Of a DNA stretch of 64,000 nt, positions 38,510 to 41,852 are shown one piece after another. Source of the stretch: Octopus sinensis (lineage: Eukaryota); the NCBI RefSeq assembly GCF_006345805.1, contig NC_043011.1:33430464-33494463 (forward strand), given 5' to 3'. Position 1 is the stretch's first letter, and every line of letters begins with the position of its first letter. Below the pieces are notes generated by a model, which was not told the DNA's origin, made no database searches, and saw nothing but the letters and a program-made list of their open reading frames with translations. A program made the translations under genes and the position numbers.

Positions 38510-41500
38510 TAAAATTTTCGCAAAATTTTTGGGTGAAGTTATTCGGAAAACTTTTGAGTAAAATTTTTGGGTAAAATTTTCGAAAGCTTTTTAGGTGAAA
38601 TTTTCGGTAAATTTTTGGGTAAAGTTTTCGTAAAATTTTTGGGGAAAATTTTCGGAGTAAAATTTTCAATGAAAATTTTTGAAAAATTTCGGTGATAATG
38701 TTTGGAAAATTTTGGGGGAAAATTTTCGGTGAAAATTTTCGAAAACTTTTTAGGTTAAAATTTTCGGTGAAAATTTTCGTAAAATTTTTGGGTAAAATTT
38801 TCGGAAAATTGTCGGATAACATTTGCGGTGCCAAAATCACAAAGTATGGAAGGCCAGTTGTGCAGAAATCACAAAGTATGGAAGGCCAGCGGTGCCCAAA
38901 TCACAAAGTATGGAAAGCCAGCGGTGCCAATTTTCGAAAAATTTTGGGGAAAATTTACAGTGAAAATTTTCGAAAACTTTTTAGGTGAAATTTTCGAAAA
39001 TTTTTAGGAAAAATTTTCGGTGAAAATTTATGGGTAAAATTTTCGAAAGGTGAAACTTTCGGTAAATTTTTGGGTAAAGTTTTCCTTGAAAATTTTCGAA
39101 AACTTTTTGGTTAAAGTTTTCGAAAAAATTTTTGGGTAAAATTTTCGGTGAAAATATTCGGAAAATTTTCAGTGAAAATATTCGGAAAATTTTGGAGTAA
39201 AATTTTCAGTGAAAATTTTCGAAAAATTTTTGAAAGATTTCGGTGAAAATGTTTGGAAAATTTTTGGGTAAAATTTTCGGTGTAAATTTTCGAAAACTTT
39301 TTAGGTTAAAATTTTCGGTACATTTTTGGGTAAAGTTTTCGGTGAAAATTTTCGACAAATTTTTGGGGGAAAATTTTCGGTGAAAATTTTCGAAACCTTT
39401 TTGGTTAAAATTTTCCGAAAATTTTTGGGTAAAATTTTCGATGAAAATTTTCACAAAATTTTTGGGTAAAATTTTCGATGAAAATTTTCACAAAATTTTT
39501 GGGTAAAATTTTCGCAAAATTTTTGAAAAATTCCGGTGAAAATTTTTGGAAAATTTTTGGGTAAAATTTTCGACAAATTTTGGGGGAAAATTTTCGGTAG
39601 ATTTTTGAGTAAAGTTTTCGGTGAAAATTTTCCACAAATTTTGCGGGGGAAATTTTCGGAAAATTTTTGGGTAAAATTTTCGGTGAAAATTTTCGAAAAC
39701 TTTTTAGGTGAAATTTTCGGTAAATTTTTGGGTAAAGTTTTCGGTGAAAATTTTCGAAAACTTTTTGGTTAAAATTTTTGGGTAAAATTTTCGCAAAATT
39801 TTTGGGTTAAATTATTCGGAAAATTTTCGAAAAATTCCGGTGAAAATTTTTGGAAAATTTTTGGGGAAAATTTTCGGTGAAAATTTTCGAAAACTTAGGT
39901 GAAATTTTCGGTAAACTTTTGGGTAAAATTTTCGGTGAAAATTTTTGCAAAATATTTCGTGTAAAATTTTCGGTGCCAAAATCACAAAGTATGGAAGGCC
40001 AGCGGTGCCAAAATCACAAAATATGGAAGGCCAGTGTAGCCAAAATCACAAAGTATGGAAAGACAGCGGTGCCCAAATCACAAAGTATGGAAAGACAGCG
40101 GTGCCAATTTTCGAAAAATTTTCGGGTAACATTTTCGATGAAAATTTTCGAAAAATTTTTGGGTAAAATTTTCGCAAAATTTTTGGATAAAATTTTCGAA
40201 AAATTTTTGAAAAATTCCGGTGAAAATTTTTAGAAAATTTTTGGGTAAAATTTTCGACAAATTTTGGGGGAAAATTTTCGGAAAATTTTTGGGTAAAATT
40301 TTCGGTGAAAATTTTCGAAAACTTAGGTGAAATTTTCGGTCCAAAATCACAAAGTATGGAAGGCCAGCGGTGGCAAAATCACAAAGCATGGAAGGTCAGC
40401 GGTGCCCAAATCACAAAGTATGGAAAGCCAGCGGTGCCAATTTTCGAAAAATTTTCGGGTAACATTTTCGGTGAAAATTTTCGAAAAATTTTTGGGTAAA
40501 ATTTTCGGTGAAAATTTTCGAAAACTTTTTAGGTGAAATTTTCGGTAAATTTTTGGGTAAAGTTTCCGGTGAAAATTTTCGAAAACTTTTTGGTTAAAAT
40601 TTTCGGTGAAAATTTTCGCAAAATTTTTGGGTGAAATTATTCGGAAAATTTTTGGGTAAAATTTTCGAAAAATTTTTGGGGAAAATTTTCGAACACTTTT
40701 TAGTTGAAATTTTACCCAAAAATTTTTCCCATAAATTTTTCGAAAATTTCACCCAAAAAGTTTTCGAAAATTTTCCCCAAAAATTTGTCGAAAATCTTTT
40801 ATGGAAAATTTTCGGTGAAAATTTTCGAAAAATGTTTGAAAAATTTCGGTGAAAATCTTTGGGTGAAATTTTCGACAAATTTTGGGGGAAAATTTTCGGA
40901 AAATTTTTGGGTAAAATTTTCGGTGAAAATTTTCGAAAACTTCGGTGAAATTTTCGGTCCAAAATCACAAAGTATGGAAGGCCAGTGGTGCCAAAATCAC
41001 GAAGCATGGAAGGTCAGCGGTGCCCAAATCACAAAGTATGGAAAGCCAGTGGTGCCAATTTTCGAAAAATTTTCGGGTAACATTTTCGGTGAAAATTTTC
41101 GAAAACTTTTTAGGTGAAATTTTCGGTAAATTTTTGGGTAAAGTTTCCGGTGAAAATTTTCGAAAACTTTTTGGTGAAAATTTTCGCAAAATTTTTGGGT
41201 GAAATTATTCGGAAAATTTTTGGGTAAAATTTTCGAGGAAAATTTTCGAACACTTTTTAGTTGAATTTTACCCAAAAATTTTTCCCATAAATTTTTCGAA
41301 AATTTCACCCAAAAAGTTTTCGAAAATTTTCCCCAAAAATTTGTCGAAAATCCTTTATGGAAAATTTTCGGTGAAAATTTTCGAAAAATTTTTGAAAAAT
41401 TTCGGTGAAAATCTTTGGGTGAAATTTTCGACAAATTTTGGGGGGAAATTATCGGAAAATTTTCGAAAACTTTATTAGGTGAAATTTTCGGTAAATTTTT

Positions 41501-41852
41501 GGGTAAAATTTTCGGAAAATTGTCGGATAACATTTGCGGTGCAAAAATCACAAAGCATGGAAGGCCAGCGGTTTCAAAATCACAAAGTATGGAAGGCCAG
41601 TGGTGCCAAAATCACAAAGTATGGAAGGCCAGTGGTGCCAAAATCACAAAGTATGGAAAGCCAGCGGTGCCCAAATCACAAAGTATGGAAAGCCAGCGGT
41701 GCCAATTTTCGAAAAATTTTCGCGTAACATTTTCGGTGAAAATTTTCGAATAATTTTTGGGGAAAATTTTCAGTGAAAATTTTCGAAAACTTTTTAGGTG
41801 AAATTTACGGTAAATTTTTGGGGAAAATTTTCGGTGAAAAGTTTCGAAAAAT
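38510..41852. repeat. 3.3-kb modular array of A3-4T4-5(CG/GG) units with clusters of a 32-bp repeat
   Basis: Dominant modules are gaaaattttcg, aaatttttgggt and aaaactttttaggtg. The unit gccaaaatcacaaagtatggaaggccagcggt (32 bp) occurs in five clusters. Confidence 0.9.

What the first reader, a model, noticed from the sequence alone, without database searches (positions are those of the whole stretch)
38510..41852. 3.3-kb array of A4T4-CG modules spaced 11-13 bp
GAAAATTTTC is the classic strongly bending decamer (established). A-to-T junctions in 39681-39800 are spaced 11,13,11,13,13,11,13,13,11 bp (counted, mean about 12). This is off the 10.5-bp helical repeat, so a superhelical rather than planar path is predicted. 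The modules are self-complementary, shuffled rather than tandemly fixed, and CpG-intact. Possible roles include nucleosome exclusion, a boundary at the CpG transition, or a nascent satellite. No function is shown.
Basis: partly seen in the sequence, partly recalled or inferred. Interest (0 to 1): 0.75.

Follow-up and report, generated by a model that had tools for sequence, protein, structure and literature searches.

The report
Octopus dispersed A4T4 satellite array
The 3.3-kb block is a real tandem array of about 12-bp AAAATTTT-CG units, but it is one of 37 or more scattered copies of a low-abundance satellite DNA family in an octopus genome, and nothing found here shows a special function.

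Summary
**Observation: confirmed.**
- Window 38510-41852 holds 119 AAAATTTT (5 in the other 60.7 kb).
- It has 184 A-to-T junctions (7.8 expected after shuffling), with a mean spacing of 12.25 bp.
- It contains no TTTTAAAA, and its CpG o/e is 2.0.

**Anatomy.** About 12-bp subunits form loose 24/37/61-bp higher-order units. Five blocks of a 32-bp repeat and two short inverted patches interrupt them.

**Family.** The array is not unique.
- An 18-mer of the unit occurs 761 times in the 2.72-Gb genome (control 2).
- A 37-mer consensus marks 37 loci on 12 chromosome-scale contigs and 7 unplaced contigs.
- Sixteen other arrays mostly have cores of 1-1.9 kb and share no flanks, termini or target-site duplications.
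- A regional subfamily exists: the junction between the 12-bp array and the 32-bp block occurs 14 times, all on this contig between 33.5 and 44.8 Mb.

**This locus.** The array sits between two truncated, locally duplicated pogo/Tigger fragments. Both junctions are unique in the genome.

**Shape.** A wedge model gives doubled local curvature. The 12.2-bp spacing turns it into a tight right-handed corkscrew with no net bend.

**CpG step.** The step is real but lies about 500 bp left of the array. It is absent at 16 other loci.

**Verdict.** A new member of a known kind, dispersed euchromatic satellite DNA.

The parts
38510..41852 (+). Whole composite array: about 12-bp A4T4-CG subunits, G-rich on the + strand, plus 32-bp repeat blocks
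38510..38824 (+). 12-bp array, left arm of the 'canonical' roughly 1.5-kb composite unit shared with other loci on this contig
38805..38832 (+). 28-nt junction from the 12-bp array into the 32-bp block (AAAATTGTCGGATAACATTTGCGGTGCC). It occurs 14 times in the genome, all on contig C15 between 33.47 and 44.84 Mb
38825..38930 (+). 32-bp repeat block 1 (3.3 copies)
38931..39970 (+). 12-bp array. TRF calls a 61-bp higher-order unit of five subunits, 14.2 copies at 72% matches, at 39126-39974, which overlaps the first bases of block 2
39971..40107 (+). 32-bp repeat block 2 (4.3 copies)
40108..40336 (+). 12-bp array segment
40337..40958 (+). About 600-bp composite unit (32-bp block 3 at 40337-40440, then 12-bp array). 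It is 86% identical to the next unit
40959..41535 (+). Second about 600-bp composite unit (32-bp block 4 at 40959-41058, then 12-bp array)
40700..40790 (-). Patch of 12-bp subunits in inverted polarity (C-rich on the + strand)
41255..41345 (-). Second inverted patch, the duplicate of the first
41516..41543 (+). Second copy of the 28-nt junction (1 mismatch)
41536..41705 (+). 32-bp repeat block 5 (5.3 copies, 92% matches)
41706..41852 (+). Terminal 12-bp array segment
37925..38509 (+). pogo/Tigger fragment A. It is 5'-truncated, carries an internal deletion of about 230 bp, and ends at the array. It is 88% identical to fragment B
41848..43040 (+). pogo/Tigger fragment B. It is 5'-truncated exactly at the array end. 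It encodes CENP-B_N and HTH_Tnp_Tc5 domains in broken frames
37900..38000 (.). Position of the CpG o/e step (0.12-0.38 to the left, about 1 or more to the right)

Best explanation
**What it is.** The array is one locus of a non-coding, low-abundance satellite (minisatellite-type) DNA family of an octopus genome. The family is dispersed at 37 or more loci. By my rough estimate from 18-mer counts it totals about 0.2 Mb.

**How the units arose.** The basic unit is an about 12-bp A4T4-CG(+GTG/GGT) motif. I infer that replication slippage and unequal exchange built it into loose 24/37/61-bp higher-order units. The same processes combined it with a 32-bp repeat.

**How this locus formed.** It begins with a roughly 1.5-kb 'canonical' composite unit that it shares with sister arrays on the same contig. 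Four shorter [32-bp block + 12-bp array] units then extended it by local tandem duplication.

**How the family spreads.** Whole array segments spread without transposon ends. They spread mostly within a chromosome region. The most likely routes are capture of array fragments (extrachromosomal circles or templated break repair) at microhomologies, and interlocus gene conversion. This step is inferred. Here the array was fixed at a rearrangement junction between two duplicated pogo/Tigger fragments.

**Physical properties.** In the model the DNA is locally curved, but the 12.2-bp spacing cancels the bends into a tight right-handed corkscrew. No cellular function is indicated.
For: **Tandem structure and periodicity:**

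**Family size and spread:**
- 342 BLAST matches at 74-84% identity across many contigs.
- 761 exact hits of an 18-mer against 2 for the control.
- 52 exact hits of the 37-mer consensus at 37 loci. Six of these loci are on C15, which is 2.5% of the genome.

**No transposon ends:**
- Across 17 loci there are no shared flanks, no fixed termini and no target-site duplication (TSD) visible at the boundaries.
- Most array pairs align equally well in several registers. This is typical of tandem repeats and not of colinear element copies.

**Regional subfamily on C15:**
- All 14 copies of the 28-nt junction lie on C15 at 33.47-44.84 Mb.
- C15 arrays share 18-44% of their 18-mers with one another, against 6-18% with arrays on other contigs.
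- Next to the junction, C15 copies are 89-93% identical, against 74-76% to a C16 copy.

**This locus:**
- Local duplication inside it: 40337-40958 is 86% identical to 40959-41535.
- Both array/Tigger junctions are unique in the genome.
- They show 3-4-nt overlaps (TAA(A), AAAT) with the Tigger sequence.

**Independent reads:** family words occur in contigs of runs under three organism labels, and an exact contig spans the left junction.

**Not a known RNA or protein:** no Rfam family reaches its gathering score, and ORFs in the array are low-complexity read-through.
Against: - The mode of dispersal is inferred, not shown.
- Single arrays have a modal core size of about 1-1.9 kb. Three C15 copies have similar left-arm lengths of about 260-330 bp before the 32-bp block. 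Both would also fit a discrete mobile unit.
- Confinement of the subfamily to one chromosome region is also what local hopping of a cut-and-paste element produces.
- Microhomologies of 3-4 nt are weak evidence in AT-rich DNA.
- Counts from the genome search are lower bounds.
- Total array length and the right junction are not confirmed by long reads.
Confidence: 0.78

Rival explanations
1. The arrays are non-autonomous mobile elements of a Foldback-like kind. Their ends are made of the self-complementary subunits (5'-AAAATTTTCG...CGAAAATTTT-3'), so any array segment carries its own inverted termini. A transposase moves them, mostly to nearby sites (local hopping).
For: - The junction-defined subfamily lies only on C15 at 33.5-44.8 Mb, at 7 loci on both strands, without shared flanks.
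- Single arrays have a modal core size of about 1-1.9 kb.
- The units are palindromic.
- The 32-bp repeat forms head-to-head foldbacks at other loci. One is an isolated 420-bp foldback at L018:1299-1721, with arms 93% complementary.
- Drosophila FB, Galileo and Tetris have ends built of tandem subrepeats (PMC4079207, PMC3573991).
Against: - No target-site duplication was seen at any of the 17 loci.
- Array ends fall in different registers of the repeat.
- The window array is unidirectional apart from two 90-bp patches.
- No transposase gene is associated. The adjacent Tigger copies are a locus-specific accident, and nine other Tigger copies examined carry no array.
Confidence: 0.12
2. The array is a structural chromatin element. 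Rigid, locally curved, off-phase A-tract DNA excludes nucleosomes and insulates an unmethylated domain from the CpG-depleted (germline-methylated) domain to its left.
For: - There is a sharp CpG o/e step within about 600 bp of the array.
- Modelled local curvature is twice that of flanks and shuffles (14.5 against 7.4 +/- 0.5 and 6.2-6.6 degrees per turn).
- There is no 10-10.6-bp AA/TT periodicity of the kind that favours nucleosome wrapping.
- The arrays keep their CpGs.
Against: - The step lies at 37.9-38.0 kb, at the left edge of Tigger fragment A and not at the array.
- 16 other arrays have similar CpG o/e on both sides, mostly 0.5-1.1.
- The high CpG o/e follows from a CG-containing unit in C-poor DNA.
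- Modelled 150-bp compaction (0.913) is no different from shuffles (0.925 +/- 0.014).
Confidence: 0.06
3. The array, or its length, is an assembly artefact of long-read consensus in low-complexity DNA.
For: No listed contig spans the whole array or the right junction. Many alternative joints between array positions appear in short-read contigs, as expected for repeats.
Against: - An exact 190-nt contig lies over the left junction.
- Near-exact array contigs occur in a run of another organism label.
- Family words stand at high depth in three organism labels.
- Dozens of independent loci have the same architecture.
Confidence: 0.03

Closest known systems
Dispersed euchromatic satellite DNAs (Tribolium castaneum Cast1-Cast9, PMC11610590; review PMC10048060; Drosophila X-linked 1.688/Rsp-like, cited in PMC11610590 as Sproul et al. 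2020)
   Same: - Short arrays (kb scale) scattered in gene-containing regions.
- Most arrays have no transposon flanks.
- Junctions lack a regular pattern but show A/T-tract microhomology.
- Regional or chromosome-biased subfamilies.
- Proposed spread by eccDNA reinsertion and interlocus conversion.
   Different: - The basic period is much shorter (about 12 bp, against 170-1100 bp).
- The array is a composite with a second, 32-bp repeat.
- My rough estimate of abundance is much lower: about 0.007% of the genome, against 0.1-1.5% per Cast family.
- eccDNA and transcription are untested here.
Synthetic curved DNA (GA4T4C)n of Hagerman 1986 (as cited in PMC2879501)
   Same: The same decamer, GAAAATTTTC, occurs 45 times. 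Only the A4T4 polarity occurs, never T4A4.
   Different: The tracts are spaced 12.25 bp apart, not 10 bp. The bends therefore do not add in one plane. Modelled end-to-end/contour is 0.87-0.91, against 0.41.
Foldback-type transposons with internally repetitive ends (Drosophila FB, Galileo PMC3573991, Tetris PMC4079207)
   Same: Arrays of short subrepeats whose unit grows inward (here about 12 bp, then 32 bp). The 32-bp part forms head-to-head palindromes at some loci. Tetris shows that such repeats can seed a satellite.
   Different: The window array has no inverted arms. There is no TSD, no defined terminus and no coding partner.
Satellite-like repeats carried by mobile elements in bivalve molluscs (Crassostrea gigas satellitome, PMC8268682; that the carriers are non-autonomous Helentrons is from my own memory)
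   Same: A mollusc genome with short satellite arrays scattered genome-wide.
   Different: Those arrays have conserved transposon flanks. Here the flanks of 17 loci are unrelated.

Membership tests
Satellite / minisatellite DNA (dispersed type) | Head-to-tail tandem repetition of a unit | tested here: met
   TRF periods 12/13, 24/25, 37 and 61. Autocorrelation and periodogram.
Satellite / minisatellite DNA (dispersed type) | The same unit forms arrays at several genomic sites | tested here: met
   at least 37 loci on 12 chromosome-scale contigs plus 7 unplaced contigs.
Satellite / minisatellite DNA (dispersed type) | Non-coding, not a known RNA | tested here: met
   Only low-complexity ORFs. 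No Rfam hit reaches its gathering score.
Satellite / minisatellite DNA (classical sense) | Long homogeneous arrays making up a sizeable genome fraction or heterochromatin | tested here: not met
   My rough estimate is about 0.2 Mb in total, from 761 18-mer hits genome-wide against 13 in this 3.3-kb array. Arrays are 1-9 kb. Unassembled arrays cannot be excluded.
Intrinsically curved DNA by phased A-tracts | A-tracts of the bending type (AnTn, not TnAn) | tested here: met
   119 A4T4 and 0 T4A4.
Intrinsically curved DNA by phased A-tracts | Tracts in phase with the helical repeat (10-11 bp), so that bends add | tested here: not met
   Spacing is 12.25 +/- 1.16 bp. There is no power at 10-10.6 bp, and modelled compaction equals that of shuffles.
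Foldback-like transposon | Two long inverted arms built of subrepeats | tested here: not met
   The window array is unidirectional except for two 90-bp patches. Only the 32-bp repeat forms foldbacks, and only at other loci.
Foldback-like transposon | Target-site duplication and defined termini | tested here: not met
   Boundaries of 17 loci inspected by eye. No formal TSD scan was run.
Transposon-borne internal tandem repeat (Helentron or MITE type) | Conserved transposon sequence on both sides of the arrays | tested here: not met
   All-against-all BLAST of 400-bp flanks gives only unrelated SINE hits and the local Tigger A/B pair.
pogo/Tigger transposon (flanking fragments A and B only) | CENP-B-like and Tc5-type HTH DNA-binding domains | tested here: met
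   PF04218 at 1.6e-7 and PF03221 at 7e-7 in fragment B. There are 594 first-look candidates for related copies in the genome, of which 40 were scored.
pogo/Tigger transposon (flanking fragments A and B only) | DDE catalytic domain, TIRs and TA duplication | tested here: inconclusive
   No Pfam hit for the 42611-42814 piece. Both copies are 5'-truncated. The ends were not examined.

The most novel reading that the evidence does not exclude
Arrays made only of self-complementary A4T4-CG subunits behave as self-propagating 'mobile satellites'. Whole roughly 1.5-kb composite arrays have been copied to at least seven sites within 11 Mb of one chromosome. They have no transposon ends, no target-site duplication and no shared flanks. 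This would be a chromosome-local dispersal route (circle reinsertion, or a transposase that reads the palindromic unit itself) not yet described for cephalopods. An earlier scan note on this genome reports another repeat that also spread as whole arrays along one scaffold.
Probability: 0.15. Interest if true: 0.6.

Novelty: new member of a known kind. Interest (0 to 1): 0.3.

Why it matters
My paper searches found no description of cephalopod satellite DNA. Two searches for octopus or cephalopod satellite DNA or satellitome gave nothing relevant. The one repeat-annotation paper I term-searched (PMC13282606) does not contain the word 'satellite'.

This family is a clean natural example of the textbook A4T4 bending motif used off-phase. 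Its chromosome-regional subfamily gives a tractable case for asking how short satellite arrays move in a large, repeat-rich genome.

For annotation, the practical message is to mask it as a satellite. Its ORFs and its miRNA-like hairpin hits should not be read as genes. The CpG step beside it should not be read as caused by it.

Tried and rejected
- **Array as the internal repeat of the flanking pogo/Tigger element: rejected.** Nine other Tigger copies examined carry no array, none of the listed Tigger matches coincides with an array locus, and both junctions are unique.
- **Conserved flanks or TSDs across loci: none**.
- **Colinear 'element-like' alignment of all arrays: rejected for most pairs.** They align in several registers. 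It holds only for the C15 composite subfamily and partly for a C16 copy.
- **CpG boundary as a family property: rejected**.
- **Known RNA families:** only sub-threshold miRNA-like hairpin hits, caused by low complexity and the inverted patches.
- **Proof of transcription: none.** A run guessed to be RNA holds family-like contigs with 4-8 differences. These may be DNA or other copies.
- **Fetching the large loci failed.** The targets were C13:49.36 Mb, C2:22.6 Mb, C886, C7:71.4 Mb and the other C15 copies. I used the 3-4-kb loci already held.
- **Earlier scan findings:** nothing by place or by sequence. Two related notes turned up by words.
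Full report
**1.

Between 38510 and 41852 the sequence is built almost wholly of A-run/T-run modules.
- Inside there are 119 AAAATTTT, 45 GAAAATTTTC and 69 AAAATTTTCG. The remaining 60.7 kb holds 5, 1 and 0.
- The opposite polarity (TTTTAAAA, TTTAAA) is absent from the array.
- With a tolerant definition (A3+, optional C/G, T3+) there are 184 junctions, against 7.8 +/- 2.9 after shuffling. Their core spacing is 12.25 +/- 1.16 bp.
- In 39681-39800 I get 10.5, 13.5, 11, 12.5, 13.5, 10.5, 13.5, 13, 11.
- The periodogram peaks at 12.1-12.3 bp. 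Nothing is seen at 10-10.6 bp.
- CpG o/e is 2.0.

**2. Anatomy.**

Tandem Repeats Finder (TRF) reports periods 12/13, 24/25, 37 and 61 with only 65-75% matches. The clearest higher-order unit is 61 bp, made of five subunits, with 14 copies at 39126-39974.

The commonest subunits are AAAATTTTCG, AAAATTTTTGGGT and AAAATTTTCGGTG. The GTG/GGT tails give the array a strand polarity (GC skew +0.43).

- The array is interrupted by five blocks (18 copies) of a 32-bp repeat, at 38825-38930, 39971-40107, 40337-40440, 40959-41058 and 41536-41705.
- Two 90-bp patches hold subunits in inverted polarity, at 40700-40790 and 41255-41345.

The stretches 40337-40958 and 40959-41535 are 86% identical copies of one roughly 600-bp composite unit.

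**3. It is a family, not a singleton.**

The window lies on contig C15 (33.43-33.49 Mb) of a 2.72-Gb, 13,516-contig genome.
- An 871-bp piece of the array finds 342 matches at 67-84% identity on many contigs.
- The 32-bp block finds 137 matches, partly at the same loci.
- An 18-mer of the unit occurs 761 times, against 2 for the reversed control. Thirteen of these are in the window. I take this to mean a family total of about 0.2 Mb. This is my own rough estimate.
- The 37-mer consensus occurs 52 times at 37 loci, on 12 chromosome-scale contigs and 7 unplaced contigs.

In sixteen further loci fetched with flanks, most array cores are 1-1.9 kb. Neither side shows conserved sequence, fixed termini or target-site duplications that I could see. 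Most array pairs align about equally well in several registers, as tandem repeats do.

**4. A regional subfamily.**

The passage from the 12-bp array into the 32-bp block runs through a distinctive 28-nt junction. That 28-mer occurs 14 times in the genome (up to 3 mismatches allowed). Every copy lies on C15 between 33.47 and 44.84 Mb, at about seven loci and on both strands.

- C15 arrays share 18-44% of their 18-mers with each other. They share 6-18% with arrays on other contigs.
- Next to the junction they are 89-93% identical, against 74-76% to a C16 copy.
- Three of the C15 copies (L035, L045 and the first 1.46 kb of the window array) share the layout [about 260-330 bp of array][32-bp block][about 1.0-1.25 kb of array]. 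L035 and the window carry about three 32-bp copies there. In L045 the block is degenerate.
- C15 also holds 6 of the 37 loci that carry the consensus 37-mer, although it is 2.5% of the genome.

So whole array segments were copied within one chromosome region without carrying flanks. Alternatively, a variant was spread among older arrays by conversion. I cannot tell these apart with the data at hand.

**5. The local setting.**

The array is bracketed by two fragments of a pogo/Tigger-type transposon.
- Fragment B (41848-43040) encodes CENP-B_N and HTH_Tnp_Tc5 domains in broken frames. It belongs to a family with 594 first-look candidates in this genome, of which 40 were scored.
- Fragment A (37925-38509) is the same 5' part with an internal deletion. 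It is 88% identical to B, and so closer to B than to other copies, which are at most 86%.
- Other genomic copies continue further 5' than either A or B. They carry no array.
- The left array boundary cuts the element at a downstream position. The right boundary cuts it about 780 bp further upstream. This is the topology of a tandem duplication with the array at its junction, not of a simple insertion.
- Both junctions are unique in the genome. They overlap the Tigger sequence by 3-4 nt.

I read this as an array segment captured during a microhomology-mediated rearrangement. This is inference.

**6. Shape.**

I coded a wedge model with the Bolshoy/Trifonov dinucleotide table recalled from memory. 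It reproduces the classical contrast: (GA4T4C)n gives 21.6 degrees per turn and (GT4A4C)n gives 1.4. This agrees with the gel results summarised in PMC2879501.

- The array has 12-15 degrees per turn. Flanks have about 6, and shuffles 7.4 +/- 0.5.
- Because the tracts are 12.2 bp apart, successive bends rotate by about 60 degrees. The axis becomes a tight right-handed corkscrew: positive torsion in 95-100% of steps, and about 67 bp per turn for a pure 12-mer.
- Over 150 bp the end-to-end/contour ratio is 0.913. That is no different from shuffles (0.925 +/- 0.014) and far from 0.41 for in-phase tracts.

The corollary is that strong gel retardation is not expected.

**7. The CpG step.**

The step is real. 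In 2-kb bins o/e is 0.15-0.56 from 1 to 38000 and 0.60-1.07 from 42001 to 64000, apart from one AG-rich bin at 1.77.

At 500-bp resolution the jump is between 37501-38000 (0.38) and 38001-38500 (1.09). That is the left edge of Tigger fragment A, about 500 bp before the array. Fragment A itself has o/e 1.17.

At 16 other arrays, CpG o/e in the flanks is similar on both sides, mostly 0.5-1.1. The array family is therefore not a general marker of such transitions. Here the step more likely marks the edge of a germline-methylated unit to the left, which is inference.

The high o/e of the array itself follows from a CG-containing unit in C-poor DNA. After the T-run, CG follows in 76 modules of the window array, TG in 33 and CA in 6.

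**8. Reads.**

Only assembled contigs of public runs were available.
- Run X1 is probably the source sample. It has an exact 190-nt contig across the left junction (38427-38616).
- Run X2, under a different organism label, has exact contigs in fragment A and a 120-nt array contig with one difference (38625-38744).
- Family words stand at high depth in runs of three organism labels.
- A run guessed to be RNA holds family-like contigs with 4-8 differences. That does not show transcription of this locus.
- The interior length and the right junction remain unconfirmed.

**9. Comparison with what is known.**

The closest described systems are dispersed euchromatic satellites. Examples are Tribolium Cast1-9 (PMC11610590) and the cases reviewed in PMC10048060. 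They share these features:
- short arrays in gene-containing regions
- irregular junctions with A/T microhomology
- regional bursts
- proposed spread by eccDNA and transposition

Foldback-type elements (Tetris PMC4079207, Galileo PMC3573991) resemble the way subrepeats of growing size are stacked. At other loci the 32-bp repeat forms head-to-head palindromes, including an isolated 420-bp foldback at L018:1299-1721. The window array, however, lacks inverted arms, termini and duplications, so membership fails.

My two searches for octopus or cephalopod satellite DNA or satellitome gave nothing relevant. The repeat-annotation paper I term-searched (PMC13282606) does not contain the word 'satellite'.

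It is probably the same family, but I did not test this. The assembly size and contig count fit that species from my own memory. I did not verify the species otherwise.

**10. Verdict.**

The array is a real, well-observed, non-coding tandem array that belongs to an old, low-abundance, dispersed satellite family with a chromosome-regional subfamily. The structural prediction is sound, but it implies little net bending. The boundary idea is not supported at family level. The array is a new member of a known kind and of modest interest. The one thread worth following is how whole arrays spread along one chromosome without transposon ends.

Noticed in passing
L018:1299-1721 (G000 C11, about 12.17 Mb): An isolated foldback made only of the 32-bp repeat: about 5.5 units forward, a 19-nt spacer, then about 7 units reversed. 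The arms are 93% complementary. No 12-bp array lies beside it and no obvious target-site duplication.
   Followed up: partly
L015/L022 (C13, 49.357-49.362 Mb), L017/L020/L023/L024 (C886): Large tandem repeats of a 1.2-1.55-kb composite unit. Each unit holds a head-to-head pair of 32-bp blocks followed by a 12-bp array in one orientation. This is a macro-satellite form of the same family.
   Followed up: partly
window 1-38000 against 42001-64000: A sharp, stable change of CpG o/e (0.15-0.56 against 0.6-1.07) with raised TpG+CpA on the left. This suggests a germline-methylated domain that ends at about 37.9-38.0 kb.
   Followed up: partly
window 12750-14003 (+): A 417-aa open frame with BTB and BACK domains (Pfam 8e-20 and 6e-18), inside the CpG-depleted domain. 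It is probably a large exon of a BTB/Kelch-type gene.
   Followed up: no
window 49662-51989 and 52922-53704: Very long degenerate (AG)n tracts of 2.3 kb and 0.8 kb, with extreme purine/pyrimidine strand asymmetry.
   Followed up: no
window 37700-37892: End of an extremely abundant repeat (summed word depth about 2x10^5 in the contigs of run X1). Its family consensus continues differently after 37892.
   Followed up: no
window 37140-37320, 37380-37520, 33188-33303: SINE-like copies. From my own memory they resemble the tRNA-related SINEs of octopus. Copies at 33188-33303 and 37167-37282 form an inverted pair, 83% complementary.
   Followed up: no
window 46973-47197 (+) and 35846-36094 (-): Remnants of further DNA transposons. 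The first has an HTH_48 (Mos1-type) domain by Pfam. The second looks like a transposase N-terminus by eye only.
   Followed up: no
G000 C2 179-207 Mb and C15 33-45 Mb: Sampled hits of the family cluster in these two regions. On the large contigs C1 and C2 almost none were listed in the central parts. Only the first 100 of the 761 18-mer hits were listed, so this is a partial view.
   Followed up: partly
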